Of a stretch of DNA of 64,000 nt, positions 3,833 to 20,823 are shown one piece after another. Both the position numbers and the translations under genes were made by a program. How positions within the stretch are numbered: position 1 is the first letter of the stretch; each line of letters starts with the position of its first letter. The stretch lies in the IMG/VR virus record IMGVR_UViG_3300010389_000001, positions 1-64,000 of that record; one strand, 5' to 3'. The notes beneath the pieces are model-generated. The model did not search any database. It worked only from the letters and a program-made list of their open reading frames with translations, and was not told the DNA's origin.

Positions 3833-3893
3833 TTGGTGCAGAAAATGGGGGTGACGGAGGTACCGCGCTGGCGCGCGGTGTCAAGTGGGAATA

Positions 3894-4071
3894 TGTCATA
3901 TAATTGTAAAAATTTGGTCAAATGTTTGTCAAGCAAATGTCAAGAGAATGTCAAGTGTCAAAAGGTTGTCAAGTGTTTGTAAAGTGTTTGTCAAAAGGTT
4001 GTAAAGCAAATGTCAAAAGTATGTCAAAGTTATGTGACGGGCTGTCACACATTTGTCACACGACTGTCACA
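3894..4071 (+). repeat. Array of 17 TGTCA-like pentamers at an 11-bp period (Pho-box-like)
   Basis: Units at 3894, 3905, 3916, 3927, 3938, 3949 / 3956, 3967, 3978, 3989, 4000, 4011, 4022, 4033 / 4043, 4054, 4065. Confidence 0.85.
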
Positions 4072-4078
4072 TAAGAAA

Positions 4079-4107
4079 TTGATCTCATATCCTAGTCCGG
4101 TTATATA
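4079..4107 (+). promoter_or_regulatory. First copy of the conserved phage promoter TTG-N5-TATCC-N6-GGTTATA
   Basis: TTGATC, 17-bp spacer, TATATA; the motif recurs before most early genes (5316, 5887, 6616, 7073, 8587, 9310, 10516, 11314, 12330, 12835, 15362, 15968, 17257 and later variants). Confidence 0.8.
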
Positions 4108-4153: not shown

Positions 4154-5074
4154 ATGGCCGTTGCATCCAAGCGTATCGTCGAGAACACCCTGGTCGCGAC
4201 CCTCGCGGCTCGCGGGTGGGCAGCAGGGGGTTCCCCCCTGGCCCAATCGTGGGCCACCGGTTGGGCGGCCCGTTGGGCCGTCGCTATCGAGGCGTCCTCC
4301 GAACGGGGGGAAGGCAAGTACAATTACACCCTGCTCGCCGAGCCCTTCAATTGCGGGCGTGGTATGCAGGTCTGGGATGCTGCATCCCCTAGCGGTCTCC
4401 TGCTGTCTATCAAGGGCAGTGCGAACCCGGACGCCATGCCGGGTACGGTCCACGTTACCACGGGGAAGCCCGTGGAGGGTGTTATCTCGGCGGCGCGCCG
4501 TGGAGCGCGCATCCCCATTGCCTTCGCTCGGGGCTACGTCGCGCCGGGCTCCGTTCCGGCCGGTACGGAGGGGGCTATCCGCCCCGCCGAAGGGGTGCAG
4601 GTCAAGGTGTTTGACCTGGGTCCTGCAATCCGTGCGTGCGCGGATATTCGAGTCCGTCGTGAGCGGGGGCACGGTGATACCGTGTATTTCGGGATCACCA
4701 GCGCGGGATACCGCGTTCTAAAGGTGAACCTGGCGCACCTCCGGCCCCTCACCGGGTGGCTGGACGCCGCCGGCCTGGACGCATGGGCGAGCGACCAGCC
4801 GGTGGGCTGGTCCAGGAAGGACCGGCACGCTGTCGCCCAAAAAGCCGGAGTCCGGTTGTTCACCAACCACCAGGTGCGCGTGGCCGGGCGCCACGTCTGC
4901 ACGCTTCAGCCGGAAGAGGCAGCCCTCCTTCGGCAGCTCCTCGACGCCCCCGAGGGCGAGTACGTCCGCTTCTGCCGAGTGCAGAAGAACAAGCTCGCTA
5001 ACAAGCTGCGCGGGCATGTGTCCATCCAGAGCAAGAGGAAGACTAAGAAGTGCGAAGGGGGCTACTACCTCTAG
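4154..5074 (+). CDS. Hypothetical protein with possible OmpR/PhoB-type winged-helix C-terminus
   Basis: GGAGGT RBS; C-terminal QVRVAGRHVCTLQPEEAALLRQLL...KLANKL...IQSKRK...GGYYL resembles Trans_reg_C, with a shortened central helix. Confidence 0.55.
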   Translation: MAVASKRIVENTLVATLAARGWAAGGSPLAQSWATGWAARWAVAIEASSERGEGKYNYTLLAEPFNCGRGMQVWDAASPSGLLLSIKGSANPDAMPGTVHVTTGKPVEGVISAARRGARIPIAFARGYVAPGSVPAGTEGAIRPAEGVQVKVFDLGPAIRACADIRVRRERGHGDTVYFGITSAGYRVLKVNLAHLRPLTGWLDAAGLDAWASDQPVGWSRKDRHAVAQKAGVRLFTNHQVRVAGRHVCTLQPEEAALLRQLLDAPEGEYVRFCRVQKNKLANKLRGHVSIQSKRKTKKCEGGYYL

Positions 5075-5099: not shown

Positions 5100-5137
5100 G
5101 CCCATCGATCCCCCCGGGGGTCGGTGGGCTTTTTTTT
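5100..5137 (+). terminator. Rho-independent terminator
   Basis: GC-rich hairpin and T8 tract after the stop codon. Confidence 0.7.
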
Positions 5138-5366
5138 GTAAACATTTTGCCCCCCCATGGGGGCGTGTGTGCTCGCTCCCTACGGTCGCCGGGCAAACTG
5201 TTTACATAAGCAAGTGTCAAGAAAGGGTCAAGAAAGCTTGACGCTTGTGCGTATGCGGTTAGGGCTCCCTTTCTTTCGTTGGGGCAATCTGTTTACACAA
5301 GCATGTGAGCAAAAATTGATCTCTTATCCTAGTCGGGTTATATGGTAGTGTAAGAAGGAGCAAGCA

Positions 5367-5690
5367 ATGCAGCCTGAAGCCCCCCACACCCTTCCACACC
5401 CGCCTGCAGGCTGGGTGTGGGAATTCGAAACTTTCCCAAGCGGATGGGTCGAGGTAGACGGACTCGTGTCCGCGCTCGATGCCGATGGGCCGCGCGTGTC
5501 CATCTTCGAGCCGGGCGTCGACCCTGCCGAGGACCTCGATTGGGAAATTATCCTTAGCGCTTCGCGCGTGGACGCGGACGAGGAAAACAACCTCGCTCGC
5601 GAAGAGTTCCCCCGGGGGACCCCGCGCGAGGTGGTGCTGGCCTGCGCAGTGGAGCTAGCTCGCTCATTCGTGAGCCTTAGCCAGCCCTGA
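5367..5690 (+). CDS. Hypothetical early protein
   Basis: Conserved promoter at 5316 and AAGGAG RBS. Confidence 0.7.
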   Translation: MQPEAPHTLPHPPAGWVWEFETFPSGWVEVDGLVSALDADGPRVSIFEPGVDPAEDLDWEIILSASRVDADEENNLAREEFPRGTPREVVLACAVELARSFVSLSQP

Positions 5691-5934
5691 CGGCCCCCCC
5701 CGGGTAGCAAGAGCTACCCGGGGGCATTGTTCGCTCTGGAATTGTAAACATTTTGCCCGGGGCATCCAGCCCCCGTGACGGCCTCCGGTGGGCGGCTGGG
5801 CAATCTATTTACATAAGCATGTGATGCTTCGGGCAAAATAGTTACATAGAGTTACACGCGTGCGGGCAAACCATTTACAGAGATTATTGATCTCTTATCC
5901 TAGTCGGGTTATATAGAAGTGTAAGGAGGTTGCC

Positions 5935-6432
5935 ATGCTGAACACCCGAGAAACCCAGCCCACCCTGATTATCGTCAGGGGACTCCCGGGCGCGGGCAAG
6001 AGCACCATCGCCGAGGAATTCGGCGCGCCCGTGCGGGAAGCTGACAAGTTTCCCGGGCTCTACACGTACCACTCCGATGGGCGCGTGGAGTTCCACGGCA
6101 TGAGCCGCATCGAGGGGATGCCGATGATAGCCAGGGCTCACACCTGGTGTCAAAACCAGGTTCGCGAAGACTTGTCTCGGCTGCCGCCTGTGGCGGTCGT
6201 TGCGAATACTTTCACGCAGGGCTGGGAGTTTGCGCCCTACGTGGAGATTGCGAAGGCTGCGGGAGCCCGCATTGTTGTTATCGACGTGTTCGATTCGGGC
6301 TACACCGATGAGGAGTTGGCCGACCGGAACACCCATGGTGTTCCCGAGCACGTTATCGCCCGTATGCGGGCCAATTGGGAGACCGATTGGCGAGCCGCCG
6401 ACCCCCGGCCCCCTTGGGAGAGGGGAGAGTAG
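5935..6432 (+). CDS. P-loop kinase/ATPase (AAA_33-like)
   Basis: Walker A RGLPGAGKST; VVANTF and RNTHGVP motifs. Confidence 0.85.
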   Translation: MLNTRETQPTLIIVRGLPGAGKSTIAEEFGAPVREADKFPGLYTYHSDGRVEFHGMSRIEGMPMIARAHTWCQNQVREDLSRLPPVAVVANTFTQGWEFAPYVEIAKAAGARIVVIDVFDSGYTDEELADRNTHGVPEHVIARMRANWETDWRAADPRPPWERGE

Positions 6433-6663
6433 GAGCCGCCCCTCCGGGGGCAATCCATTTACATAAGTGTGTAAACATTTTGCCCGGGTCTTTGACTGGA
6501 GCTGGCCTCCCGCCGGGCAATCTATTTACATAAGCATGTTATGCTTCGGGCAAAATGGTTACACAAGTTATACAGGGTCTCGGGCAAAATGGTTACAAAA
6601 GCATGTGAGCAATAATTGCTCTCTTATCCTAGTCGGGTTATAGGGTAGTGTAAGGAGGTTACC

Positions 6664-6978
6664 ATGGGAAACAAGGTTGTGGTTAATAGCTGCTACGGCG
6701 GCTTCAATCTGTCCGAGGACGCGAAGCGGCTGTTCAATCAGATCCAGATTGACCGGCACCTGCCGGTCACGGATTGGGATGCGATCTGGGTGGGCGACAT
6801 CCCGAGGCACCACCCGATCCTGGTTCGGGTGGTGGAGCTGCTGGGCGAGAGGGCCGGAGAACGCTACTCCGATCTCCGGGTCGTGGAGATTCCTGGGAAT
6901 CAGTACCTGATTTCCGAGTATGATGGATTTGAGTCGATCCAGACTCCGGAGGGGATGAACTGGACCTTCATTGACTGA
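6664..6978 (+). CDS. Conserved phage hypothetical protein
   Basis: KVVVNSCYGGFNLS, RHHPILVRVVE, EYDGFE; own promoter and RBS. Confidence 0.75.
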   Translation: MGNKVVVNSCYGGFNLSEDAKRLFNQIQIDRHLPVTDWDAIWVGDIPRHHPILVRVVELLGERAGERYSDLRVVEIPGNQYLISEYDGFESIQTPEGMNWTFID

Positions 6979-7123
6979 GGGTCGCCCCTCCGGGGCAATC
7001 TATTTACATAAGTATGTAAACAGTTTGCCCGAGCATTCCTTGGGAGCCCAGGCAATCTATTTACTCAGATTATTGATCTCTTATCCTAGTCGGGTTATAG
7101 GATAGTGTGAAAAGGAGAAGGCA

Positions 7124-7348
7124 ATGCCCTACGCTGACGACGGACAACTCTACCGCGCGCGAATCAGTGAAATCCTCTCGCGCCTGAACGAGATGCGCGA
7201 TGCACAGCTCCAGCGCACGCTGGAGGCCGCTCGCAGCGGCAATATGGTTGATCCGACGGTGATCGAGTATGATCACCAGAGCGCCGTGTACGAGATGCTC
7301 GCGGACGCCATCCAGGTGGTGGTGGAGGTGGCCTACGCTCCCCGGTAG
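7124..7348 (+). CDS. Hypothetical early protein
   Basis: Promoter at 7073 and AGGAG RBS. Confidence 0.7.
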   Translation: MPYADDGQLYRARISEILSRLNEMRDAQLQRTLEAARSGNMVDPTVIEYDHQSAVYEMLADAIQVVVEVAYAPR

Positions 7349-7544
7349 GCCGGCGCTCCGTCTGGAGGCCCCTCGCGGGGCAATCTGTTTACATACTTAT
7401 GTAACTATTTTGCCCGAGGCAGCGTTGTGATATTCGGGCAATCTATTTACATAAGTGCTCTGCCTTGAAAAGCAAAATATTTACAGAGAAATTCATTGAC
7501 TCTCACAGCTCACCTTGTTATGATAATGAAGTAAGGAGGTTTCC

Positions 7545-7898
7545 ATGACTGATTACGCCGACCTTGTTTCTCAGGCCGACCGGGCGCGGGCAGACATCGC
7601 GCACCTTCATCAACTCCATCTTTGGGACGGGGTTGACGTGTCAGCGGCGCTGGCTATGGCAGAGAAGCATCTAGTATGGATTGAGGAGCAGCTCACCGCT
7701 GCTACCATCGAGGTCATTCATGACATCGGCACGGCCCGCTGGAAGGAGCTTCCGGTGCCCGAAGTCTACAGCCCCGAATGGGAGAAATATTCTGCCCTCT
7801 CGCAGAAGCTTGACTCTGCTCGCCGCTACCTCGCCCAGCTCCGGCAGCTCGGCTTCCCGGCAGTACGCTGGTACCACGCTCCCCGCTTCCATGGCTAG
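7545..7898 (+). CDS. Hypothetical early protein
   Basis: TAAGGAGGT RBS; TTGACT-type promoter upstream. Confidence 0.7.
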   Translation: MTDYADLVSQADRARADIAHLHQLHLWDGVDVSAALAMAEKHLVWIEEQLTAATIEVIHDIGTARWKELPVPEVYSPEWEKYSALSQKLDSARRYLAQLRQLGFPAVRWYHAPRFHG

Positions 7899-8073
7899 CG
7901 GGGGGTTTCCCAGAATTGTAAATGATTTGCCCCGGGACTCTGTCCCGGGCCCCGGCTTCCAGCCGGGCAATCTATTTACATAAATGCGCTCCTTTGAAAA
8001 GAAAAATATTTACAGAGAAATCTGTTGCCCCTTTTGGTCAGCTCTGTTATGTAAGTAGAGTAAGGAGGACACT

Positions 8074-8451
8074 ATGTCGGTTCACACTTTTGAATCCTTC
8101 GAACTCTTTCACCACCTTCCGGCGGATGCCCTCGCGGGCCTGCCATTCGCGGTGGCGGAGAAAATGGATTTGGATTTCGTCGAGTGGGGCGGCGTCCATG
8201 GCGAGATCAGCGCGAAGCGCCTCGCGGACGCTGGCATCGAGGATCTCTCTAAGTGGGAGGTTATCGGAGGCAAGCTCATCGACCACAGCGGTTGGTGTGA
8301 CTTCGAGCAGAAAATGGAGTTTCACTATGAGGATCTTCGGATCCTAGTGCGCAAGTCTCATCTCGCGGAAGCCCAGCGGGCTTTCTGCGATGGCCCAGCT
8401 CTGACCCATAATCCTTTTGCGGCCGCTCTCTCGAATCTTCGGGGAGGCTGA
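8074..8451 (+). CDS. Hypothetical early protein
   Basis: TAAGGAGG RBS. Confidence 0.7.
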   Translation: MSVHTFESFELFHHLPADALAGLPFAVAEKMDLDFVEWGGVHGEISAKRLADAGIEDLSKWEVIGGKLIDHSGWCDFEQKMEFHYEDLRILVRKSHLAEAQRAFCDGPALTHNPFAAALSNLRGG

Positions 8452-8639
8452 GGCCTCCGGCCGGGCAAATTATTTACTTAAGTGTGTAAATGGTTTGCCC
8501 GGGTCTTTGGCTAGAGCCGGCCTCCGGCCGGGCAAACCATTTACCGTAATCTGTATGGTGTTCGGGCAATCTATTTACAGAGATTATTGATCCCTTATCC
8601 TAGTCGGGTTATGAGGCAGTGTGAACCCAGGAGGACACC

Positions 8640-8846
8640 ATGGCACGCATCCGCACCACTTACCAGCCCACTCCCGGCGCCAGCGAGGACCAGGTCCTCC
8701 AAATCGCATTTCGGTGCGGCCGGGACCTCGACCCCGACGATCGCCGTGCGCGGTGGATCGATGCCCTCGATGGCGCAGCCTACACGGCTGCGGTGGAGGC
8801 CTACCATGCAGGCCAGGCCGAGGCCTATGAGTGTGAGGGCTGGTAG
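8640..8846 (+). CDS. Hypothetical early protein
   Basis: Promoter at 8587 and AGGAGG RBS. Confidence 0.65.
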   Translation: MARIRTTYQPTPGASEDQVLQIAFRCGRDLDPDDRRARWIDALDGAAYTAAVEAYHAGQAEAYECEGW

Positions 8847-8915
8847 CCACCGGCCCGGCCGGGCAAACTATTTACAGAGTAAACATTTTGTTTTGCAAAT
8901 AGTTTGCCCCGGGGC

Positions 8916-9125
8916 TCAGTCTCCCTTGACGGTGCCCCGACAAGCCTTCCGGCTTTGCTCCTTTCGAGCATCCCCGTGGGATCCGGCCCGTCCAGAGTTC
9001 CCGAGAATCATCCCGAGCACTTCGAGGTTCCGTCGAGCCGGGGCAATTTGTTTACCGTTTTCCATTGCCCTCCGACGGGCGCGAGCCTTCCGAGCCTTCC
9101 GACGTTGCTTGTTTGAGCGCGACAT
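8916..9125 (-). CDS. Small Arg-rich basic protein (inverted module)
   Basis: AGGAGGT RBS on the minus strand; MSRSNKQRRKARKARARRR. Confidence 0.6.
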   Translation of the reverse strand: MSRSNKQRRKARKARARRRAMENGKQIAPARRNLEVLGMILGNSGRAGSHGDARKEQSRKACRGTVKGD

Positions 9126-9362
9126 GGCTACCTCCTAAGGAGGATTAACACGATGAACCGGGAAGGCTAGGAGAAATATCATCCGGGCAAATTATTTACA
9201 AATCCTTATTCGGGTGTCGGGCAAACTATTTACAAAGGCGTGTCAAGGCTTCGGGCAAACTATTTACACAAGTTGCACAGGGCTTCGAACAAAATGTTTA
9301 CATAGAAAATTGATCTCTTATCCTAGTCCGGTTATGTAGTAGTGCCACGAAGGAGAAGTATC

Positions 9363-10265
9363 ATGGCTAAGGCATCGACCCTGATTGAAGAAACCGACGC
9401 CCGTATCGCGGAGGGCATCATCGCGAGCATCGATGACGCGGAAGCCCGTGGCGTCAAGTGGGTCCCCGGGTGGGACCGTTCGGCTGGGTTCCCCTCGAAC
9501 CCGGTTACGGGCCGCCAGTATGGCGGAAACTACAACGGGCTCGTGCTGCTGATTGCAGCATCGCAATTCGGCGACAGCCGGTTCGCTGGCCGTAGCCAGT
9601 GGCGAACCAAGGGGAATGTCATTCCCCGGGACACCATTGGGACGAAAATCTTCTTTCCCCGGTTTGTGTGCGTCAAGTGCAACAAGATCGCGGGATTCGC
9701 GAAGAAGTGCTCCGGTTGTGGAGCCCAATTCAAGCGATACACCGACAAGCGGTGCATCGGCTTTGGCGAGTCTGAGGTTTTCAACAATTTGCAAGGCGAA
9801 ACCCCGTTGCCCGAGGCCGGGTCCGATTGGGAAGTTACGTGCGAGGAAGCTCGCAAGATTGTGGAGAAGGCTGGCGCGGATGTCCGCCACGGCGGTGGGC
9901 GTGCGTTCTACTCCCCGAAGGAGGACCGTATTCAGCTTCCCGAGATGGCTTCCTTTCACGATGAAGCGGCCTACTGGGCCACGAGCTTGCACGAGCATGC
10001 ACACTGGACCGGCCATAAGACGCGGCTCGCCCGTCCTGGCATCGTCAACATGACGGGCTTTGGTTCGGCCGAGTACGCATACGAGGAGCTTGTGGCGGAA
10101 ATTTCCGCGAGCTTCCTGTGCAAGCATGCGGGTGTGCAGCGTGAGGGTCTTGACGACCAGCATGCTGCCTACCTCGCCAGCTGGCGAAAGGCTCTGAGCG
10201 ACGACCCTTCCATCATCCGCAAGGCAGCGGGGGAAGCTGGCAAGGTGCTCCGCTACCTGACCTGA
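9363..10265 (+). CDS. ardC: ArdC-like antirestriction/ssDNA-binding protein (DUF1738 plus zincin domain) with a Zn-ribbon insert
   Basis: NPVTGRQYGG.N, AFYSPKEDRIQLP, LHEHAHWTGH, YAYEELVAE, HAAYLASW; CxxC...CxxC insert. Confidence 0.88.
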   Translation: MAKASTLIEETDARIAEGIIASIDDAEARGVKWVPGWDRSAGFPSNPVTGRQYGGNYNGLVLLIAASQFGDSRFAGRSQWRTKGNVIPRDTIGTKIFFPRFVCVKCNKIAGFAKKCSGCGAQFKRYTDKRCIGFGESEVFNNLQGETPLPEAGSDWEVTCEEARKIVEKAGADVRHGGGRAFYSPKEDRIQLPEMASFHDEAAYWATSLHEHAHWTGHKTRLARPGIVNMTGFGSAEYAYEELVAEISASFLCKHAGVQREGLDDQHAAYLASWRKALSDDPSIIRKAAGEAGKVLRYLT

Positions 10266-10563
10266 TCTGCCCGGCCCCGGGAATTCCCGGGGCCTTTCGC
10301 GCTCGTGTGAATGTAAATATTTTGTTTGCCGGAAATGTAAATGATTTGCCCGGGGTCGTGCCCCGATCCGGCCTGCGGCCGGGGCAAAATGTTTACGTAA
10401 GTGTGTAAAAAGAGGGTAAATTTGTAGGCAAAGTATTTACACAGAGTCACTCACACGCAGGCAAATCATTTACATTCTCTTTGCCTTCCTTCGGGCAATC
10501 TATTTACATAGAAAATTGATCTCTTATCCTAGTTGGGTTATAGGGTAGTGTAGGGAGGTTCCG

Positions 10564-10764
10564 ATGGATTGGCAAAGGTTGATTGCTCTGGCGATGATTG
10601 CAGAGCAGGTTGATGCTTGGCTCACAGCTAAGGTTTGCCTGGCCTTCTTCCAAAAGAATGGCATGGAAATTTCTGAAGATATGTGGCAAGAAGCCGCAAA
10701 GCTGGATATGGAGCTAGAAGGAATGATGATGACGGCCGACGGCTGGATATCCGGGGAAGCGTGA
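10564..10764 (+). CDS. Hypothetical early protein
   Basis: Promoter at 10516 and GGAGGT RBS. Confidence 0.6.
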   Translation: MDWQRLIALAMIAEQVDAWLTAKVCLAFFQKNGMEISEDMWQEAAKLDMELEGMMMTADGWISGEA

Positions 10765-10895
10765 GAAACCTGGGTCGGGGGGAGAGGGTGACTCCCCCCG
10801 GCCTCTCACCGCTCTGTAAATTGTTTGCCCGGGCTTTCCCCATTTTTTATTGCGCTTTTTCTCTGAATCGGTTATCAGTCTTGTAGGAGGTAGCG

Positions 10896-11081
10896 ATGGA
10901 AAAGCATTCCACCCACATCCGGTGCGCGTTCTGCGGCTGGAAAGCACTCAAGTTCCGCAAGCTAAAGTCTGGAAAGACTCGCGGCCCGGATGCAGCCTTT
11001 CAGATGCTGTTTAACCATGCGGCCGCGCATCATCCGGAGCAATTTGACAAGGCTTTTCCCGACCGCTTTGAGGAGGAGTGA
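10896..11081 (+). CDS. Small C2H2-type zinc-binding protein
   Basis: CAFC...HAAAHH; AGGAGGT RBS. Confidence 0.55.
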   Translation: MEKHSTHIRCAFCGWKALKFRKLKSGKTRGPDAAFQMLFNHAAAHHPEQFDKAFPDRFEEE

Positions 11082-11381
11082 GTCGGGGGGTAAATTATTT
11101 ACACAAGCGTGTAAATAGATTGCCTGGATGGCTGATGGATATTGTGGCTTCATTCGGGCAATCTATTTACATAATTAGACCCAACCCTCTGGGCAATCTA
11201 TTTACATTGCCTTCCCATCGTTCGGGCAAAATAGTTACCTAATCCATTTCTCTCCCGGGGCAAACTGTTTACACAATCGCCTTGGTCCCCGGGCAAACTG
11301 TTTACATAGAAAATTGATCTCTTATCCTAGTCGGGTTATATGGTAGCGTGAGGGACGAACCCTCGCAGGAGGTAAACAACA

Positions 11382-11783
11382 ATGGCTAACATCTTCACCA
11401 CCGAGACCACCGAGAGCGCCGTCCAGAACATCAAGGGCACCATGCGCGTGTACCGCGACGACGACGGAGAGGCTTACGTCTCTTTTGCAACGAACAAGGG
11501 GAAGGGCAGCGGTGCCCAGGTTATCCCCGTCGCTGAATTCGCCGATTGCGTTGCAGCCTTGGCGGAAATTTCTTCCAACGGTCTGCCTGAAGTGGAGGAG
11601 GAAATCTCTACCTCCGAGTCGATTCGTCGCACGGCAGCTCTGTCCGATGGGGTTATTTCCTTCCGGGTTCGCTCCGGAAAGGGAGCTAAGCCTGCCAAGG
11701 TTTCCAGCGATGAACTTGCCGACGTGGTAAAGCTTCTCCAGGGAACCGTCAAGGCTGTGGAGAAAGCAGCGAAGGATCTCTAG
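11382..11783 (+). CDS. Tandem-domain GKG protein, paralog 1
   Basis: SFATNKGKGSGAQVIP and SFRVRSGKGAKPAKV internal repeat; paralogs at 17372 and 34141. Confidence 0.8.
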   Translation: MANIFTTETTESAVQNIKGTMRVYRDDDGEAYVSFATNKGKGSGAQVIPVAEFADCVAALAEISSNGLPEVEEEISTSESIRRTAALSDGVISFRVRSGKGAKPAKVSSDELADVVKLLQGTVKAVEKAAKDL

Positions 11784-12377
11784 AGCGAAGGCCCATGGCA
11801 CGCGGGCTAAAGCGTGCCGCCCCTTGGGGCGTATGCCTGAAATGTAAATAAATTGCCCGGGGAGGTGCGCGTGCTTGCAAACGTGCTGGACCTTTCTAAC
11901 GCTCATGTTCCGGGCCCAACTCCAAATTGGGGACGGGTGCGCGTGGTTGAGCATGAATTCGGATGGATTGTCTTTATCTCTGGTGACCTTGGAGATAGGG
12001 AGGCCCGTCGAACGGTTCCCGATTGGATGCTTGGAATTTGGAAGCATGCTGTAAATGAGGGCTGCATCGCTGTCATATTCGACAGAGACGCGGACGTGGA
12101 TGATCGTTTTCTGAAATTCAATTGGTGAGCTAATGGAAGGTCGGCGAAAGCCGAACTTCCTTTCTTTGTTTTCTGTAAACATTTTGCCTGAGCTTCTTTG
12201 TAAATATTTTGCCCGGGCTTGTGTGTTGGTATCCGGAAAGCAAGGGGATATTACTTATCAGGTAATATCCCCGGGCAAAACGTTTACTTAATTGGTGCGC
12301 ACACGCAGGCAAACTGTTTACTCAGAAAATTGCTCTCTTATCCTAGTTGGGTTATAGGGTAGCGTAAGGAGGTTGAG

Positions 12378-12680
12378 ATGAGCAACTTGGTTGGTGCGCC
12401 GGAAGAGGTTTTGGTTGTCCACAGGCTTCTTGTGGAAAACGCTGAGGAAGCAGGGTACGATGCCTCCTTTGTGTATTGTCGCGAAGAGAGGTGCTATCCT
12501 GACTACGAGCCTTCGGGAAATTGGCTCGTCGGGCCAAACATGGAAGGCTTCGGAGGCACCATGGTTCGCACGTCTGCTGGTAATTGGTTTTACCGCGAGG
12601 CATGGAGCGGCGAGGACATCCCGATGAAGGCTGGCTTTGAAGAAGCCAAGTCCGATGCATCATGCTGGTTCACGGGGTGA
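12378..12680 (+). CDS. Hypothetical early protein
   Basis: Promoter at 12330 and RBS. Confidence 0.65.
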   Translation: MSNLVGAPEEVLVVHRLLVENAEEAGYDASFVYCREERCYPDYEPSGNWLVGPNMEGFGGTMVRTSAGNWFYREAWSGEDIPMKAGFEEAKSDASCWFTG

Positions 12681-13034
12681 CCCGCCCCTCCGGGGCAATC
12701 TATTTACAGAGCCTCCGGGCAAAATGTTTGCAAAACAAAATGTTTACCCTGTAAATAGATTGCCCGGTGGCTTTGGCTCAAACAAAATATTTACTTATCT
12801 CTGAGCCAGCAGGGCAAATCATTTACATAGAAAATTGATCTCTTATCCTAGTTCGGTTATATGGTAGCGTAAGGAGGTTGGAATGGAATGGACGGAAATT
12901 TACGTGGCTATCTACAGGGCTACGTGCGATAGGTGCGGGCATGCGGGTCAAGGTTGGTTCTGGATTAAGGGGACCCATGATAGGGGAACCCTCTGCATTG
13001 ACTGTTACCACCGGCAAGGTTAAGGGAGGCTCCT

Positions 13035-14097
13035 ATGGAAGATGAATTGGAATATCACCAATGCGACCGTGATTCGTCTTGGTGGGAAAATGATTATCAG
13101 GGAATTCCCCTTGCGAGGGTTTGCGATAGATGTTATGAAGCTAAGATGGCACGTTTCCGTCCGGAGATTCTCACCGGGTATTCTCAAGGCGACGTTGACG
13201 AGCCAATCGACCCCGATTGGTAATGGGTCGCCTGATTCCTTCTAAAGAATTGGATAAAGCAACACGCACAAGAGGTTTATCATGGCAAACTCAGACGTGA
13301 TCAAGGCATGGGTCCGCGAGGAAGCGTGCAGTTCACAAAACCTTAGCACCGATGGTATTTCTCTTTGGAGTTATCGTCTTAAGATTGGAGATACTATCTG
13401 CGGAAAGAAGGTCGTGTATGACCACACGTCCAATGGTCTAGGGTTTGTTTCCAGAACAACATCTAAGCATGTGGGTCTCGCTAAGTATGAATGCTCCAAG
13501 TAAACCAGGCTGGTATTGGTATAATGATGGTGGAGAATGGGAGGTAGTATTGGTTAGGGGAAATAAATTCCTTTACGTCAAGAGGCTTTCGGGTTATACT
13601 CAGTCGGGCGTGCCACTCTCATGCGTGCGTGGAACTTGGGGCTCTGAAGTTAAGCGAGGTGAATAATGGGCATCACAATCTTTCTAGAAGAAGAATACGG
13701 CTACCGTTACTGGCTGTGGGAAACGGGCATGGACGCGGAAGCGCTCATGTGGTGGTGGTCTAGCCTTTCCTCTGTCGATGAATACTTCTTCGATCCTACA
13801 GGGCTTCCTGGAAAGCTTACGCAGCTGTTTGACTTTACGGACACGCTTGTGGCTAACGTCCTCTCTGAAGATATTGAAGAGGATATTAAGAATAAGAAGC
13901 TAGAAAAGCTGTTTCGCAGTAATCCTATCTGGATTAAGAGCGGAGATATGGGCTATGACCCTCACGCGACCCATGTGGACGTGCCTGGACTAACGGACGG
14001 GTGGACCGCGCACGTCCACATGAACGATGATTCATGGATTAAGCCGCCTGGTAATAAAGAGATATGCCTTGGAGGTAACGATGGTTCGAACCGCTAG
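13035..14097 (+). CDS. Cluster of small hypothetical proteins (13035-13223, 13282-13503, ~13487-13666, 13666-14097)
   Basis: Tightly packed ORFs with RBSs after the promoter at 12835. Confidence 0.55.
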
Positions 14098-14818
14098 AAC
14101 CCTTGGTTACATAATCCTTAGCTTTCTGGATTATGTGGCCGAAAGAAGAGATAGCAGAGTGGGCATTAAAGATGCTGTTCAATCTGCTTTGAGACGCCCG
14201 GTTTAATCCGGGCTTTGTTGTGCCTTTCTTTGGCCTTATTACTTAGCTAAGTAATAAGCTCAGGCAAAATGTTTACTTAAATCTGAGATTCCCTCGGGCA
14301 AAATATTTACATTAAATGTGAGAACTACTTACATTCCATCGGGCAAATTGTTTACTTAACCAGTAAGAGGCCATTACATAACATAGTAAATGGTTTGCCC
14401 GGCGCGCTTTTTGTTTTCTATCTTTTCTGAATAATTAAGACTCAAGTTATTATTTGGGAAATAAATAATAACTTAACTCTACCTTAATAGGGGCTAATGA
14501 TTATTTTTCAAAATCCATTTAATCATCCAAGTCGCGGTAACCAGATGAGGATTCTCTGGATTGTTAATATGAAGGTTTCTTAGAAGCCAGCGAAGATTAG
14601 GATTCGTTAGATTCTTTCTCATTTGGGGAACCGACATTTGATCCAAAACCTTTTGGAGTTCCGCCTTCTGATTGGTCAGATCCTTAACAGACATAATCTA
14701 TAGCCCTCTTTGTTAAAAGATTTCTACTGGTTTGTTTTGTTATTTGACTTGCTTTGTTAGATGCCCCTCGCGCGGGGGGCGAGAAGGGGGCGTGTGCGCG
14801 CGGAAGAACGCGTTAGCT

Positions 14819-15028
14819 TTACGGGCTTTTTTCTCTTTTTGAAGCTCCGGGCGGAGTCGGGCTGATCTTCTTTCGGATCCTTAGCTTTTCTTGAATATCT
14901 AACTCACACATCCCACAACATGATCCAGCTCCGGAAGCTTGAGTTATTTCATGAAGATCCTTTGCTCCCCTGTCAATTAAGGCCTCTACTGCTTTGTCTG
15001 TAATTCCTTTGCAGATGCAGAGTATCAT
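14819..15028 (-). CDS. bfd: Bacterioferritin-associated ferredoxin-like [2Fe-2S] protein
   Basis: MILCICKGIT...GAGSCCGMC matches the BFD CxC...CxxC pattern. Confidence 0.8.
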   Translation of the reverse strand: MILCICKGITDKAVEALIDRGAKDLHEITQASGAGSCCGMCELDIQEKLRIRKKISPTPPGASKREKSP

Positions 15029-15409
15029 TGCTTTGCCTTTTTGGGGAGTCCCCTTGTTAAGTGTATAATAAATTACCAGATTGATTTTGTCAACTATTTT
15101 TTTTAAAAAGTTATTCCGACCATTGCGAGCCCGATGTAATCTATCTTTCTTTGATCTTCTGCCCGGTTATTTGCGGGGCAAAAAAAGTTGTAAAAAAATT
15201 CTTTTGTCTTTTTAATCATTTTCTTTTCGCCTTTCTAATCTTTATTTATTTTGGCTGCGGCTAGCCGCCGGTTGCCCCTGGGGTTTTTATAACCCGTTTT
15301 CCTCATGGCCGCCCCATTTTTTTGGAGCCAACCCTATGGGGCAAAATATTAACAGAAAAAATTGATCTCTTATCCTAGTCGGGTTATATAGAGGTGCAGG
15401 GAGGTTGGA

Positions 15410-15736
15410 ATGGGACTTGACCAATACGCTTTTGCTGTGAAGGACGATGAGCGGATCGAGATTATGTACTGGAGGAAGCATGCCAACCTCGAAGGTTGGA
15501 TGGCTGATCTTTATAAGCAACGCGGTGGAAAGGGGCAGTTTAACTGCGTTGACTTGAAGCTCTTTGAAGATGATATTCTTCGATTGAGAAAAGAGCATCG
15601 TGAGCTTCGCAAGGCTTCCGGGTTCTTTTGGGGTGAATCAAGTCTGGCAAAGGTGGAAAATACTCACGAGTTTATTCAGAAGGCTTTGCAATATCAGAGC
15701 GAAGGCTATGATATTATCTACACCTCCTGGTGGTAG
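15410..15736 (+). CDS. Conserved phage hypothetical protein
   Basis: MGLDQY...YWRKHANLEGWM...GFFWG...YTSWW; promoter at 15362. Confidence 0.75.
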   Translation: MGLDQYAFAVKDDERIEIMYWRKHANLEGWMADLYKQRGGKGQFNCVDLKLFEDDILRLRKEHRELRKASGFFWGESSLAKVENTHEFIQKALQYQSEGYDIIYTSWW

Positions 15737-16427
15737 GGATTGTTAGCAATAAAGCTAGCTACTTTATTGCGGCATAATGGGCGAGAGTTACTCCGGGGTT
15801 CGACTCCCCGGTCGTCAAGAGACGGAATTTGGCCAGTAACCACTCGGTTTCTAAATAAGCGTTGTGGCTAATGCTTATTTAGAGGCGAAGGGAAAGGCGG
15901 GTTATGAAGCCACTTGTAACCCGCCCGACCCTGACCCAGCCGCTGGGCAATCTATTTACCGAAATTATTGCTCTCTTATCCTAGTTCGGTTATAGGGTAG
16001 TGTGGGAGGTGATCGATGGAATGGACGGCTACTTCAATTCTCTCCGGGGTCGAGCGGACCTTGGTTGTCCCTGGCTTGACCGAGGACGCCGTAACCCGTT
16101 GGCAGGCCGGTGAGCTAATCCAGAATGCTATGCCGGATATTGATCCGGAGTGGCGCGAGTTTGTTATGACCGGGATTACTCCCGATGAATGGACCAATCT
16201 TATTGGCGAGGGAGGTGAGTGATGGCCTTTGGAATTCGTCGCCGCAGTCGGAACAGTGATGCTTACGAAGTTTGTATCACCAATATGTATGGAATGGTTC
16301 GACTAGAAGATTTCTGGTCGCCATATAAGGGTGCTACAAAAGAAGAGTGTGAAGAGTATATCGAGCGGATTAAAGCCGCATCAAAAGAGATTGAGAAAGA
16401 TATTCTCGGAAGGAGAAGGAGAGGTGA

Positions 16428-16700
16428 GTGATGGAAGGTAATGCTGATAATGAGCGTCCCTTGTGGAGCCCTTCTCCGCGTCAATCTCCGCCATCATATG
16501 GAGAGGTTCCTCTTCAATTGCTTCGCTGGGGATTGGGGCGCGGAGAGTTTACTAGCCGTCAAGCTTCAGAGGGACTTAATGTTGCTTATCGTGTCGCGGT
16601 TAGAGGGGTAAATAAACTCGCCGATCTTGGATTGGCTGTTGACGTTGGAAAGGATCGGCAAGCCACGCTGTGGACCGTTTCTGTTTCCTGGTCTGATTAA
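16428..16700 (+). CDS. Possible winged-helix DNA-binding protein
   Basis: FTSRQASEGLNVAYRVAVRGVNKLADLGLAV is HTH-like. Confidence 0.45.
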   Translation: MMEGNADNERPLWSPSPRQSPPSYGEVPLQLLRWGLGRGEFTSRQASEGLNVAYRVAVRGVNKLADLGLAVDVGKDRQATLWTVSVSWSD

Positions 16701-16855
16701 CTAATTCCTCCGGGGTAAGATCTTGGCATCTACCCCGCCGGGGCAAACTATTTACAAAGCCCCGGGGCAAAACATTTACAAAACAAAATATTTACATTGT
16801 AAATGTTTTGCCCCGGCCTTGTTACTTCGCGAAGTAACAAGGCCTTTGAGGCTTT

Positions 16856-17140
16856 TTATTCCGCCCTCACAACCTCCCCTGTAAACATCCCATAGACAAC
16901 CTCTAGGAGATTTTCTTTCCCAAGGTCTTCGGGGTTTACATAATTCCCCCATGGCACAGGAGACGTGGTGTAAGTGCCATTCCACTCGCCACCTAGAATC
17001 ATGACAGTTTCCTCATGAGACTTGGGGACAGTTACCATAGTGTCTCCCCTCTTATATGAGACTCCAACACGGGTCAGTTGCATAGCAGACTTCTCAAAGC
17101 CAAGCTTCCGCATCCGGGCAAAAAAGCTACGTCGGGTCAT
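16856..17140 (-). CDS. Hypothetical protein (inverted module)
   Basis: Conserved promoter on the minus strand at 17161-17187 and AGGAGGT RBS. Confidence 0.7.
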   Translation of the reverse strand: MTRRSFFARMRKLGFEKSAMQLTRVGVSYKRGDTMVTVPKSHEETVMILGGEWNGTYTTSPVPWGNYVNPEDLGKENLLEVVYGMFTGEVVRAE

Positions 17141-17371
17141 GGGCTACCTCCTACGCCTCTACATAACCCGACTAGGATAAGAGGCAAATAATTTGGGGCG
17201 GGGCCTCCGGGCAAACTATTTACATAATCCCAGGGGCAAACTGTTTACCGAAATTATTGACCTCTTATCCTAGTTCGGTTATATGGTAGTGTGAGGAGGG
17301 GGAGGCAGAAAAAAGCGAAAAACGCTTGACCCCTCATCGCCAGCCTGTTAATCCACCGTAGGAGGTATCCG

Positions 17372-17803
17372 ATGGCTAACATCTTCAGCAACGACAGCAA
17401 CGAGAGCCCGCTCACCGTTATCCGCCAGACCATGAGCGTTTCGCTCGACGACGGGGGAACCCCGGTTGTCAGCTTTGCCACGAACCGTGGCAAGGGTTCG
17501 GGCGCCCAGACCATGCCGGTCGACCAGTTTGATGCCTATGTGGCTACTCTGGAGGGTTACGTCGCTGATGGCATTCCAGAGGGAACGCCAGAGGAAAACC
17601 TGACTGCTGCGGAGTCTGTGACCCGCACTATCAAGCTGGATGACGGGGTTATCTCGTTCCGTGTCCGGTCTGGTAAGGGCGCGAAGCCCGCGAAGATTCC
17701 TTCCGAGGACTTCGCGGAGACTGTCAAGCTGCTTCGCTCGACTGTTGCGGCCGTTCAGTCTGCGGGGGAGGGCCTTACCTCTTCCGATGACAGCGACGAG
17801 TAA
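17372..17803 (+). CDS. Tandem-domain GKG protein, paralog 2
   Basis: High similarity to 11382-11783. Confidence 0.8.
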   Translation: MANIFSNDSNESPLTVIRQTMSVSLDDGGTPVVSFATNRGKGSGAQTMPVDQFDAYVATLEGYVADGIPEGTPEENLTAAESVTRTIKLDDGVISFRVRSGKGAKPAKIPSEDFAETVKLLRSTVAAVQSAGEGLTSSDDSDE

Positions 17804-17856
17804 ACGCTCGCACACCCGCTGGCACACCGGGTAAAGTGTGCCACGTTTTATTAACC

Positions 17857-17890
17857 GGGGGAGCGCGACTTTTCGCGCTCCCCCTTTTTT
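17857..17890 (+). terminator. Rho-independent terminator
   Basis: GGGGGAGCGCGA/TCGCGCTCCCCC stem and T-tract. Confidence 0.75.
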
Positions 17891-18293
17891 GTGTCCGCGC
17901 GCCAGTTTATGTAAACATTTTGTTTCCCCTTATCTAAGGGTCGACCACATGCGCCCGCGCAAAATATTTACAAAACTTGGGGCAAAATGTTTACAAAGGC
18001 TAAATGAAAATGATTTTCAATTAGATTACTATGTAATATAGAATAAAATGAATTTTTATATTATATATACTATGTAATAGTAATATTTCAGGGGCCTAAG
18101 AATTTTTCTGGTTAGCCCTTTAGTCCGCATCATTCTCAGGGCAATCTGTTTACACAAAGTTCTGATCCACCCTGTAAAGAGATTGTGAAGGCAGCCAGGA
18201 ATTTCTTGCACCATATCCCGGCTCGGTTATATGTAGGCGAGGGTAGCGAAGCACGCCAAACCCTCGCAACATAGAAAGAAGGGATAAGACGTT

Positions 18294-20743: not shown

Positions 20744-20823
20744 CGTCCTTGGTATAATAGTTGAGGGAGCGATAATTCCGCTCGAATAACTAAGAACGAT
20801 TATTAAAATTCATAGGAGATAAT

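What the first reader, a model, noticed from the sequence alone, without database searches (positions are those of the whole stretch)
5137..18160. Modular early region: single-gene cassettes each preceded by helically phased GGGCAA-N4-TTTACA boxes at a fixed distance from the promoter
Seen: boxes recur at 33-35 bp (5798/5831/5864; 6515/6548/6582; 9185/9219/9253/9287; 11156/11191/11224/11258/11291). The last box starts exactly 23 bp before the promoter TTG in ten cases (5864, 7050, 8564, 9287, 10493, 11291, 12307, 12812, 15339, 15945; also 17234) or 34 bp, one more helical turn (5282, 6582). Each box can be read as two half-sites (GGGCA, TTACA) 11 bp apart, the geometry of the TGTCA array. Inference: a dedicated activator or DNA-coating regulon with ~60 sites controlling a bank of small host-takeover genes, conceptually like but distinct from PeSL promoter cassettes of T4-type phages.
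Basis: partly seen in the sequence, partly recalled or inferred. Interest (0 to 1): 0.85.

Follow-up and report, generated by a model that had tools for sequence, protein, structure and literature searches.

The report
Phased regulator boxes before phage promoters
An uncultivated 232-kb phage carries about 70 copies of a 16-21 bp DNA box, set at a fixed distance upstream of nearly every promoter in its GC-rich bank of small early genes. The same layout recurs in related phages, so it is most likely the binding-site set of a dedicated phage transcription regulator.

Summary
The box GGGCAA-N4-TTTACA has 86 matches against about 6 expected, and 76 score above every shuffle. Sixty-six lie in 5.1-18.2 kb, and 68 of the 70 up to 22 kb are intergenic.

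The proximal box starts 23 bp (11 cases) or 34 bp (2 cases) before the promoter TTG. Neighbouring boxes sit at distances that step by about 11 bp, although their spacers are unrelated.

Two strain variants show the box core evolving about 4 times slower than other intergenic DNA. At least five diverged metagenomic relatives keep the layout of terminator, box or boxes, then promoter. The box's 3' end lies a lineage-constant 29-33 nt before the -10, although the sequence in between differs completely.

The first gene of the region encodes a 306-aa protein whose C-terminal domain models as an OmpR/PhoB-type winged helix with no receiver domain. Every homologue context examined that has flanking DNA also carries boxes.

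Best reading: these are operator arrays for a dedicated phage DNA-binding protein that acts on RNA polymerase from about -50, probably as an activator. The binder and the sign of regulation are inferred, not shown.

I rate this a new variant of a known kind: multi-site phage regulons and PeSL-like cassettes.

The parts
3879..4069 (+). Lattice of 13 TGTCA(A/C) repeats, spaced 11, 21-22 or 33 bp apart with two off-lattice gaps (15, 7). It ends at promoter P4079. This is a second repeat family, which occupies the place of the boxes upstream of the first gene.
   Evidence: 13 of the window's 40 plus-strand TGTCA lie within 190 bp.
4079..4107 (+). Promoter P4079. It has the same core as the cassette promoters (TTGATC, 17 bp, TATATA) but no GGGCAA box.
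4154..5074 (+). Gene for the 306-aa protein, the candidate box or lattice binder. Residues about 225-306 model as an OmpR/PhoB-type winged helix. There is no receiver domain.
5137..5344 (+). Intergenic module: boxes at 5137(-), 5191(+) and 5282(+); promoter TTG at 5316 (box 34 bp before it).
5743..5915 (+). Module: boxes at 5743(-), 5798, 5831 and 5864(+); promoter TTG at 5887 (23 bp).
6448..6644 (+). Module: tail-to-tail pair 6448(+)/6470(-), then an array at 6515, 6548 and 6582; promoter TTG at 6616 (34 bp).
6993..7101 (+). Module: pair 6993(+)/7015(-), box 7050; promoter TTG at 7073 (23 bp).
7378..7524 (+). Module: pair 7378(+)/7400(-), box 7436, degenerate box 7470; variant promoter TTGACT at 7496 with TATGAT ending at 7524 (box 26 bp before TTG).
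7917..8055 (+). Module: boxes 7917(-) and 7965(+), a degenerate box near 7999, and a variant promoter paralogous to the one at 7496.
8463..8615 (+). Module: pair 8463(+)/8485(-), boxes 8530 and 8564; promoter TTG at 8587 (23 bp).
8861..9338 (+). Module: pair 8861(+)/8894(-), box 9041, an array at 9185, 9219 and 9253 plus the degenerate box 9287; promoter TTG at 9310 (23 bp). It drives the ArdC-like gene 9363-10265.
10336..10544 (+). Module: box 10336(-), array at 10382, 10426, 10459 and 10493; promoter TTG at 10516 (23 bp).
10815..10830 (-). Lone minus-strand box just after the end of gene 10564-10764.
11088..11342 (+). Module: pair 11088(+)/11110(-), a five-box array at 11156, 11191, 11224, 11258 and 11291; promoter TTG at 11314 (23 bp).
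11843..11858 (-). Lone minus-strand box after gene 11382-11783.
12174..12358 (+). Module: boxes 12174(-), 12199(-), 12273(+) and 12307(+); promoter TTG at 12330 (23 bp).
12693..12863 (+). Module: boxes 12693(+), 12717(+), 12750(-) and 12812(+); promoter TTG at 12835 (23 bp). It drives the operon 12883-14206.
14262..14400 (+). Box cluster 14262, 14296, 14341(+) and 14385(-) at the end of the operon. No cassette promoter follows.
15339..15390 (+). Single box 15339; promoter TTG at 15362 (23 bp).
15945..15996 (+). Single box 15945; promoter TTG at 15968 (23 bp).
16741..16813 (+). Boxes 16741(+) and 16765(+) with 16798(-). The last two form a perfect long inverted repeat after the operon 16016-16700.
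17160..17285 (.). Divergent promoters (minus-strand TTG at 17188, plus-strand TTG at 17257) with boxes 17209 and 17234 between them. Box 17234 is 23 bp before the plus-strand TTG.
17957..18233 (+). Boxes 17957, 17980 and 18139, and the first 'class 2' promoter (TTGCAC type, at 18205; box 66 bp before it).
19810..35522 (.). Scattered outlying boxes: 19810(-), 20130(-), 21548, 21734, 25962, 33210, 34057, 34755, 34882 and 35507. All are intergenic or at a stop codon. Some lie 42-66 bp before class 2 promoters.

Best explanation
The boxes are the operator set of one dedicated sequence-specific DNA-binding protein that controls the early gene bank of this phage clade.

Each intergenic module reads: terminator hairpin; often a tail-to-tail box pair or a lone inverted box; then one to five same-orientation boxes about three helical turns apart; then the promoter. 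The promoter-proximal box covers roughly -58 to -43. From there the bound protein would touch RNA polymerase, most likely the alpha C-terminal domain, in the position where box-less promoters of the same genome carry an A/T tract. Upstream boxes would add cooperative occupancy on about the same DNA face. Boxes at gene ends would insulate one cassette from the next.

I think activation is the more likely sign (about 0.45, against about 0.25 for shut-off).

The best candidate for the binder (about 0.4) is the 306-aa protein of the first cassette, 4154-5074. It has an OmpR/PhoB-type winged helix and no receiver domain. Its own promoter carries a TGTCA lattice where the others carry boxes.

Shown: the boxes exist, their position and spacing are constrained, they are under purifying selection, and the layout is conserved in relatives.

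Inferred: that a protein binds them, which protein, and the sign of regulation.
For: 1. Enrichment and placement: 86 matches against about 6 expected; 76 above all shuffles; 68 of 70 intergenic.

2. Fixed register to the promoter: 23 bp in 11 cases and 34 bp in 2, the latter through an exact 11-bp insert.

3. Centre-to-centre distances are quantised. Same strand: 24 / 34 / 44.5. Plus then minus: 21 / 32 / 43. Minus then plus: about 36.5 / 46.5 / 55.5.

4. The 15 spacers in the 33-35 bp arrays are unrelated. Mean identity is 0.335 against 0.264 expected from composition, and only one pair is a duplicate. The spacing is therefore selected, not inherited.

5. Strain variants L092 and L095: box core 5/216 changed, other intergenic 51/609 (Fisher p=0.0014), N4 9/72 (p=0.0017). 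Two of the core changes restore the consensus.

6. Relatives carry the same box core with their own N4 and their own promoter. The box 3' end lies a lineage-constant distance before the -10: 30 nt in 10 of 13 L102 promoters, 30 nt in 4 of 5 L084 promoters, 29-30 nt in 3 of 5 L093 promoters, 33 nt in 7 of 9 L118 promoters and 5 of 6 L119 promoters, and 31 nt by hand count in two L116 promoters. L105 varies (30, 19 and 27 nt). The 30-nt linker is unrelated between lineages.

7. L102, L084 and L118 have no recognisable -35, as activator-dependent promoters do. The window's class 2 promoters lack boxes and have A/T tracts at the same place.

8. The arms of the tail-to-tail pairs are no more alike in N4 than random boxes (1.89 against 2.19 of 4; P=0.87). 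Each box is therefore selected as a unit, not as half of a hairpin.

9. Candidate protein. The AlphaFold2 model has pLDDT 88. For the C-terminal domain model (pLDDT 89), the top 11 PDB matches are all OmpR/PhoB DNA-binding domains, with probability up to 0.94 and TMq 0.40-0.68 (0.5 or higher in 9 of the 11). Pfam Trans_reg_C matches 2 of 8 homologues at E=0.002. A profile gives weak hits to the PmrA/BasR C-terminal domain. Homologues sit first in the same cassette array, and every context with flanking DNA has boxes: L102/L103, L104, L105, L115, L116/L117 and L118/L119.

10. OmpR sites are tandem 10-bp sub-sites of the form GTTACA/TTTACA, arranged in threes upstream of ompF and ompC (PMC5438342, PMC3050692). 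The 3' half of the box has that form.
Against: - There is no binding, transcript or TSS data.
- The Foldseek E-values for the winged helix are weak (0.05-0.9), the helix before the recognition helix appears to be missing, and the full-length model matches nothing.
- The TGTCA lattice next to the gene is conserved in L118, with related repeats in L102. It is an equally good or better target for that protein, in which case the box binder is unknown.
- An activator requirement fits poorly with anti-restriction genes, which should be expressed at once.
- Tail-to-tail pair geometry differs between lineages (6-bp gap here, 1-2 bp in L102 and L104), and array spacing is looser in relatives (28-45 bp).
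- The roughly 20-bp lineage-specific block just upstream of the -10 could mean a phage-specific polymerase or sigma factor rather than host sigma-70, which would change the contact model.
Confidence: 0.55

Rival explanations
1. The boxes are the same protein-bound operators, but the protein is a shut-off repressor or roadblock. It would occlude the upstream (UP-like) contact of strong early promoters and, at gene ends, stop read-through. This resembles stoperators, or Aca-type repression of anti-defence promoters.
For: Anti-restriction-type genes (ArdC-like) should fire immediately, without waiting for a phage activator. The window promoters have a usable -35 (TTGATC or TTGCTC) and an A/T-rich linker. 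Inverted boxes sit right after terminators in every lineage. Multi-copy asymmetric sites that stop elongation are known in Cluster A mycobacteriophages (PMC9283540, PMC6550527).
Against: The boxes never overlap the -35 or -10. A strict box-to-(-10) register across lineages is more typical of a stereospecific contact. Relatives L102, L084 and L118 lack a -35. In arrays the boxes lie upstream of promoters, not inside transcription units.
Confidence: 0.25
2. No dedicated protein is involved. The box would be a composite, multi-use DNA element: the T-rich tail of intrinsic terminators, an UP-like or curved upstream element, and a homology block that lets cassettes recombine, as in PeSLs.
For: Many plus-strand boxes directly follow a short GC hairpin that uses the GGGC, so that AAUCUAUUUACA serves as a U-rich tail (the same in L118). 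The proximal box overlaps the UP-element position. The promoter module of L092 is a mosaic of other copies. The number of cassettes between the winged-helix gene and the ArdC-like gene differs between relatives: 7 in the window, 5 in L102, 4 in L118 and 1 in L105.
Against: GGGC and ACA are almost invariant and conserved across lineages whose promoters differ completely. Arrays of 3-5 boxes have no hairpins and no nearby terminator role. The 11-bp quantised spacing with unrelated spacers is not needed for homology or for U-tracts. A/T content alone would not hold the core at 2.3% divergence.
Confidence: 0.1
3. The boxes are iteron-like or centromere-like sites for replication, partition or DNA organisation, bound by a winged-helix Rep-like or ParB-like protein. 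Their position near promoters would be secondary.
For: The repeats are direct, about 20 bp long and roughly in helical phase, with inverted pairs as well. This matches the iteron-versus-operator pattern of Rep proteins (my own knowledge). A winged-helix gene sits next to an AT-rich non-coding region full of repeats, 3400-4080.
Against: The sites are spread over 13 kb at nearly every promoter, with a fixed register to the -10 in several lineages. The Rep-DNA structure 5kbj is only a very weak match (probability 0.08-0.09). The origin-like features belong to the TGTCA and CTGCAAAGCTT region, not to the boxes.
Confidence: 0.05
4. The boxes act at the RNA level as stem-loops (terminators, processing or stabilising hairpins), or the TTTACA half is simply the -35 of an overlapping promoter (TTTACA, 16 bp, TATCCT).
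For: Some convergent pairs fold well, with z-scores of -4.7 to -7.5. The promoter scan finds TTTACA-16-TATCCT at seven proximal boxes (TTAACA at an eighth).
Against: The arms of pairs are not kept complementary in N4, and three of the 21-bp pairs fold no better than shuffles (z -1.0 to -2.2). Most boxes are unpaired direct repeats upstream of the TSS. The TATCCT-type -10 is not found at the matching place in L102, L084, L093 or L105, and distal boxes have no -10 at all.
Confidence: 0.05

Closest known systems
PeSL (promoter-early stem-loop) cassettes of T4-type phages (PMC2839356, PMC4122927)
   Same: A composite terminator plus conserved early promoter is repeated between small, variable and mostly unknown genes. 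Cassette content differs between relatives. Repeated modules show signs of exchange, such as the L092 mosaic promoter.
   Different: This system adds a separate, strongly conserved 16-21 bp box in one to five phased copies, plus inverted copies at gene ends, which PeSLs do not have. The phage is not a recognisable T4 relative within the window. The early genes are compositionally distinct (GC3 0.6-0.8).
Stoperators of Cluster A mycobacteriophages (L5 gp71-type repressor; PMC9283540, PMC6550527)
   Same: Dozens of copies of an asymmetric site sit in short intergenic gaps, all read by one phage protein. A monomeric two-domain protein reading an asymmetric site is a good model for how a 306-aa multi-domain protein could read GGGCAA and TTTACA.
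   Different: Stoperators are 13-14 bp, spread over the whole genome, in one orientation relative to transcription, and they block elongation for lysogenic immunity. Here the sites are confined to one region, sit upstream of promoters in a fixed register, form phased arrays, and no lysogeny genes were seen.
OmpR/PhoB-family tandem site arrays (ompF F1-F3, ompC C1-C3, pho boxes; PMC3050692, PMC5438342)
   Same: Sites are 20 bp, made of two 10-11 bp sub-sites, repeated in tandem upstream of the promoter down to about -40. The half-site form is GTTACA/TTTACA for OmpR (PMC5438342) and, for PhoB, TGTCA (my own knowledge). The candidate protein has that DNA-binding fold.
   Different: There is no receiver domain, so no phosphorylation control. 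The repeat period is 33-35 bp rather than 20-22 bp. The two halves of the box are not direct repeats of each other. The regulon is inside a phage.
Conserved early promoters with conserved inverted-repeat operators in Streptomyces phage phiC31, and the dispersed C1 operators of phage P1 (my own knowledge, not checked here)
   Same: There are many near-identical promoters in the early region, with a multi-copy operator for one phage regulator in the intergenic gaps.
   Different: Those operators are repressor sites of temperate phages, single or paired, not phased arrays at a fixed upstream distance.

Membership tests
PeSL cassettes (T4-type phages) | Composite motif of a terminator stem-loop directly followed by a conserved early promoter | tested here: met
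   GC hairpins after stop codons, followed by a conserved promoter of about 43 bp, occur in at least 13 intergenic regions. An extra box element lies between them.
PeSL cassettes (T4-type phages) | Indels and replacements between close relatives have their end points in the motif | tested here: inconclusive
   Cassette number differs between relatives, and the L092 promoter module is a mosaic. No pair of close genomes with a clean indel end point was available.
PeSL cassettes (T4-type phages) | The host genome is a T4-type myovirus | not tested
   Only the window was read. Its genes (tRNAs, tmRNA, ligase, AsnRS-like and others) do not identify a T4 core, and there was no nucleotide match to known phages.
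Stoperator regulon (Cluster A mycobacteriophages) | Many copies of a short asymmetric site in intergenic DNA | tested here: met
   76 asymmetric boxes; 68 of the 70 up to 22 kb are intergenic.
Stoperator regulon (Cluster A mycobacteriophages) | One orientation relative to transcription, inside transcription units genome-wide | tested here: not met
   Both orientations occur in a context-specific pattern. The sites lie upstream of promoters and are confined to about 5-22 kb.
Stoperator regulon (Cluster A mycobacteriophages) | Bound by the immunity repressor, which stops elongation | not testable with these tools
   Needs binding and transcription assays.
OmpR/PhoB-type regulator with tandem upstream sites | Winged-helix Trans_reg_C DNA-binding domain | tested here: inconclusive
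   For the domain model, the top 11 PDB matches are all of this family (probability up to 0.94, TMq 0.40-0.68, but E 0.05-0.9). Pfam PF00486 matches 2 of 8 homologues at E=0.002. The window protein itself has no Pfam hit.
OmpR/PhoB-type regulator with tandem upstream sites | N-terminal receiver domain with a phospho-acceptor Asp | tested here: not met
   No Response_reg match was found. The N-terminal 220 residues model confidently but match no known fold.
OmpR/PhoB-type regulator with tandem upstream sites | Sites made of direct repeats 10-11 bp apart | tested here: inconclusive
   The TGTCA lattice meets this. Within the box, GGGCA and TTACA are 11 bp apart but share only the CA.
OmpR/PhoB-type regulator with tandem upstream sites | Sites upstream of the -35, reaching to about -40 | tested here: met
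   The proximal box spans about -58 to -43 if the -10 is TATAKG, and further boxes lie upstream.
Iteron origin / Rep initiator | Repeats clustered at one origin next to the rep gene | tested here: not met
   The boxes are dispersed at more than 20 intergenic regions. Only the separate TGTCA and CTGCAAAGCTT region fits this feature.
Integron gene cassettes | Promoter-less cassettes ending in attC sites, next to an integrase and a common promoter | tested here: not met
   Each cassette has its own promoter and ribosome-binding site. No integrase appeared among the proteins scanned.

The most novel reading that the evidence does not exclude
A clade of uncultivated large phages may run a plug-and-play gene-cassette platform. 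One receiver-less OmpR/PhoB-type protein would read both a TGTCA lattice at its own gene and about 70 phased boxes. It would act as a position-locked activator at about -50 and as an insulator at cassette ends. Any small foreign gene dropped between two modules would then be expressed, insulated and co-regulated at once. That would be functionally analogous to an integron, but with a promoter per cassette and built on a transcription factor. The separate high-GC codon style of the whole bank would match early expression before the phage's own tRNAs take over.
Probability: 0.15. Interest if true: 0.8.

Novelty: new variant of a known kind. Interest (0 to 1): 0.6.

Why it matters
Large uncultivated phages are known almost only as gene lists, and their regulatory logic is nearly blank. 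This case gives a complete, testable cis-regulatory grammar read from sequence alone: box, spacing rule, register to the promoter, terminator coupling and a candidate regulator. It is conserved in at least five lineages.

If the binder is confirmed, the result would be:
- a compact orthogonal regulator-operator pair with built-in spacing rules;
- a marker for finding the early, anti-defence gene banks of this phage group in metagenomes;
- an example of how phages keep a fast-changing set of accessory genes under one control.

Tried and rejected
1. Nucleotide search of the region against 50,697 phage records found no match. Protein searches with four window proteins found no close cultured relative.

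2. The promoter core searched in IMG/VR found only the source contig, plus chance hits inside a coding region of an unrelated phage.

3. A strict box pattern in IMG/VR gave multiple hits only in the source contig. All other loci were single chance hits.

4. The two-box pattern in metagenomes gave 19 loci. L092, L095, L084 and L093 are true relatives. L085, L087, L090, L091, L094 and L097-L099 are unrelated tandem repeats or eukaryotic satellites and were set aside.

5. The same pattern in bacterial genomes gave nothing convincing. One Verrucomicrobiota MAG contig has three box-like repeats.

6. Pfam and PHROGs scans of 30 cassette proteins found no classical HTH regulator.

7. The word-based homologue search for the 306-aa protein found only the protein itself. 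The exhaustive search found 7 homologues.

8. Full-length fold searches against the PDB and BFVD were uninformative.

9. The sigma-54 reading (GGCA...TT.C in the right spacing) was rejected. The -12 GC is AC, and arrays 33 bp apart make no sense as promoters.

10. The IHF-like core CAA-N4-TT was rejected as too partial.

11. The hairpin reading and the TTTACA-as-(-35) reading were tested and rejected.

12. Rfam finds no known RNA family in the region.

Full report
WHAT THE WINDOW IS

The window comes from IMG/VR contig IMGVR_UViG_3300010389_000001, which is 232,533 bp long. It carries seven tRNAs and a tmRNA, an AsnRS-like synthetase, asparagine and glutamine synthetase-like genes, a DNA ligase and UvdE. 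It is therefore a large uncultivated phage. It has no nucleotide match and no close protein relative among deposited phages.

The backbone is about 41% GC. The stretch 4-12 kb is 53-61% GC.

CHECK OF THE OBSERVATION

The pattern GGGCAANNNNTTTACA with up to 2 mismatches occurs 86 times, against 5.96 +/- 2.27 in shuffles. A weight matrix built from the hits with at most 1 mismatch finds 76 boxes above the best score of any shuffle. Sixty-six of them lie in 5137-18154. Of the 70 boxes up to 22 kb, 68 are intergenic, although two thirds of that DNA is coding.

The middle four bases are not free. They read W-M-T-R, and the box continues on both sides as YC-GGGCAA-WMTR-TTTACA-TAA.

A second conserved element, TTGAYC-TCTTATCCTAGTYSGG-TTATAKGG followed by AAGGAGG, occurs 14 times on the plus strand between 4.1 and 17.3 kb. 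A looser form (TTGCAY..ATCC..GGTTATAGG) continues to 58.9 kb.

The start of the last box is 23 bp before the TTG for eleven promoters. It is 34 bp for two, and those two carry an exact 11-bp insert. The box at 9287 is degenerate.

ANATOMY OF AN INTERGENIC MODULE

The usual order is:
- stop codon;
- a GC-rich hairpin;
- often a plus box and a minus box tail to tail with a 6-bp gap, or a lone minus box;
- a gap;
- one to five plus boxes;
- promoter, ribosome-binding site and gene.

About a dozen units hold one gene. The stretches 12883-14206 and 16016-16700 are operons.

SPACING

Centre-to-centre distances between neighbours fall into classes that step by about 11 bp:
- same strand: 23-25 (4 cases), 33-35 (15 cases), 44-45 (2 cases);
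- plus then minus: 21 (5 cases), 32 (3 cases), 43 (1 case);
- minus then plus: about 36.5, 46.5 and 55.5, with 49, 63 and 75 falling outside these classes.

The 15 spacers inside the 33-35 bp arrays are unrelated to each other. Their mean identity is 0.335, against 0.264 expected from composition, and only one pair is a duplicate. The spacing is therefore maintained by selection rather than inherited by tandem duplication. Thirty-three to 35 bp is about 3.2 turns, so 'helically phased' is approximate. The 11-bp stepping is the firm result.

SELECTION ON THE BOXES

Two short contigs from another sample, L092 and L095, are strain variants of 9.5-12.4 kb. Across them:
- box core positions changed at 5 of 216 sites;
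- other intergenic DNA changed at 51 of 609 sites (Fisher p=0.0014);
- the N4 positions changed at 9 of 72 sites (p=0.0017);
- coding DNA changed at 131 of 1818 sites.

Two of the five core changes restore the consensus. The promoter module before gene 10564 in L092 is a mosaic of other copies, which points to exchange between modules.

RELATIVES

A two-box pattern searched in metagenomes, together with the contigs that encode homologues of the first cassette protein, gave several diverged relatives:
- L093 is syntenic with 13.6-20 kb at 50-87% amino-acid identity.
- L084 has an ArdC-like homologue at 38% identity.
- L102/L103, L104, L105, L116/L117 and L118/L119 were reached through the protein homologues.

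All have the same core, (G)GCAA-N4-TTT(T/C)ACA, with a lineage-specific N4. All have the same module order and a lineage-specific promoter.

The 3' end of the proximal box lies a nearly constant distance before the -10-like TAT:
- 30 nt in 11 of the 13 box-bearing class 1 promoters here (41 nt in the other two);
- 30 nt in 10 of 13 promoters in L102;
- 30 nt in 4 of 5 in L084;
- 29-30 nt in the 3 box-bearing promoters of 5 in L093;
- 33 nt in 7 of 9 in L118 and 5 of 6 in L119;
- 31 nt in L116 (two promoters, counted by hand);
- 30, 19 and 27 nt in L105.

The 30 nt in between is unrelated from one lineage to the next. L102, L084 and L118 have nothing like a -35. This conserved register is the strongest evidence that whatever sits on the box works together with the transcription machinery.

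WHAT THE BOXES ARE NOT

Hairpins. Some convergent pairs fold well. However, the arms of pairs are no more alike in N4 than random boxes (1.89 against 2.19 of 4; P=0.87). Most boxes are also unpaired.

An overlapping promoter. TTTACA-16-TATCCT is flagged at seven proximal boxes (TTAACA at an eighth). The relatives have no -10 at that place, and distal boxes have none at all.

A known RNA. No Rfam family matches.

One qualification applies. Several plus boxes follow a short hairpin that uses their GGGC, so the box may also serve as the U-rich tail of a terminator (the same in L118).

A CANDIDATE BINDER

The first gene after the non-coding region, 4154-5074, uses the same promoter core but carries four TGTCAC repeats at 11 bp where the other promoters carry boxes. 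Its 306-aa product has no Pfam or PHROG match. An exhaustive search found only seven homologues.

With their alignment, AlphaFold2 gives a confident model (pLDDT 88, pTM 0.79). The whole model matches nothing. The C-terminal 89 residues were modelled alone (pLDDT 89). For that model the eleven best PDB matches are all OmpR/PhoB DNA-binding domains, including PhoP, PrrA, VbrR-DNA, RpaA and NsrR. Probability reaches 0.94 and TMq is 0.40-0.68 (0.5 or higher in 9 of the 11), but the E-values are only 0.05-0.9.

Two homologues hit Pfam Trans_reg_C at E=0.002. A profile gives weak PmrA/BasR hits over the same residues. There is no receiver domain.

In L102, L105, L116 and L118 the homologue is again the first gene of the cassette array, after an AT-rich non-coding stretch. 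Every homologue context with flanking DNA carries boxes.

The caveat is that the TGTCA lattice also recurs upstream of the homologue in L118, and related TTGTCAAC repeats occur in L102. The protein may therefore read the lattice rather than the boxes, or both. GGGCAA, TGTCAA and TGCCAA share nGnCAA.

MECHANISM

I take the boxes to be operators of one dedicated DNA-binding protein. The proximal box at about -58 to -43 is where OmpR-type activators sit. It is also where the box-less class 2 promoters of this genome have A/T tracts. Three relatives lack a -35. These points favour activation by contact with RNA polymerase, with the upstream boxes adding cooperative binding on about the same face.

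A shut-off repressor or roadblock using the same sites is the main rival. It fits better with genes, such as the ArdC-like anti-restriction gene, that should fire at once. A protein-free composite element, an iteron- or centromere-like role, and RNA-level roles are less likely, for the reasons given under the rivals.

The roughly 20-bp lineage-specific block just upstream of the -10 is unexplained. It may mean a phage-specific sigma factor or polymerase.

COMPARISON AND NOVELTY

The layout works like PeSL cassettes (PMC2839356, PMC4122927) with an added operator layer. It also works like the multi-site regulons of temperate phages, such as stoperators (PMC9283540, PMC6550527), and like OmpR tandem sites (PMC3050692, PMC5438342).

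It is not a member of any of these:
- PeSLs have no boxes.
- Stoperators are single-orientation sites within transcription units.
- OmpR/PhoB regulators have a receiver domain, and their sites have a 20-22 bp period.

I rate it a new variant of a known kind. Interest is moderate to high, because the grammar is unusually clean, conserved and directly testable.

Noticed in passing
window 3400-4080: An AT-rich non-coding region holds two further repeat families: six CTGCAAAGCTT-like repeats (3705-3820) and 13 TGTCA(A/C) repeats on an 11-bp lattice (3879-4065). The reverse complement of TGTCAA is TTGACA. It resembles an origin or control region. Similar repeats lie upstream of the homologous gene in L118 and L102.
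   Followed up: partly
window 4154-12680 against the rest; L102 10001-19082: The early cassette genes have GC3 of 0.6-0.8, against 0.36-0.45 in backbone genes. The same jump begins exactly at the winged-helix gene in relative L102. The phage's tRNAs mostly read A/U-ending codons (anticodons TCT, TAA, TGG, TGT and TGC). This suggests the early genes are tuned to a GC-rich host and the late genes to the phage's own tRNAs.
   Followed up: partly
window 18205-58887 (for example 18205, 18794, 21777, 23582, 26004, 26844, 29895, 35573, 49433, 58887): A second promoter class (TTGCAY-CATATCC-N6-GGTTATAGG) has A/T tracts instead of boxes. The invariant ATCC...GG inside the spacer is unexplained. Each related lineage has its own block of about 20 bp there.
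   Followed up: partly
window 11382-11783 and 17372-17803; 34141-34611 (-): Paralogous small proteins (starting MANIF...) occupy separate cassettes. L093 also carries two copies. No family match was found.
   Followed up: no
window 9363-10265, 5935-6432, 11871-12128: An ArdC-N plus zincin MPTase-PolyVal protein, an AAA_33 kinase-like protein and a DUF5983 protein occupy cassettes. This gene set is typical of the leading regions of conjugative elements. The same ArdC-like and AAA_33 pair recurs in L102 and L118, and the ArdC-like gene in L105.
   Followed up: partly
L106 (Verrucomicrobiota MAG contig CAZECJ010000256.1) 440-560: Three box-like repeats (GGGCAAAGTTTTTACG on the reverse strand) lie at a 31-bp period in a 66% GC contig. 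The feature-based Atlas look-alikes of the 306-aa protein were also mostly from Verrucomicrobiota. Together these are a weak lead to the host.
   Followed up: no
window 52650-53026: A phage-encoded tmRNA with tag peptide ANNNYHYNSVALAA overlaps the start of ORF 52979-53992.
   Followed up: no
L105 1400-1560; L116 1500-1560 and 2690-2860: Relatives carry a further repeat family (GAACTRTGCCAAC and TGGCATGATTTTTGCA) interleaved with the boxes in some intergenic regions.
   Followed up: no
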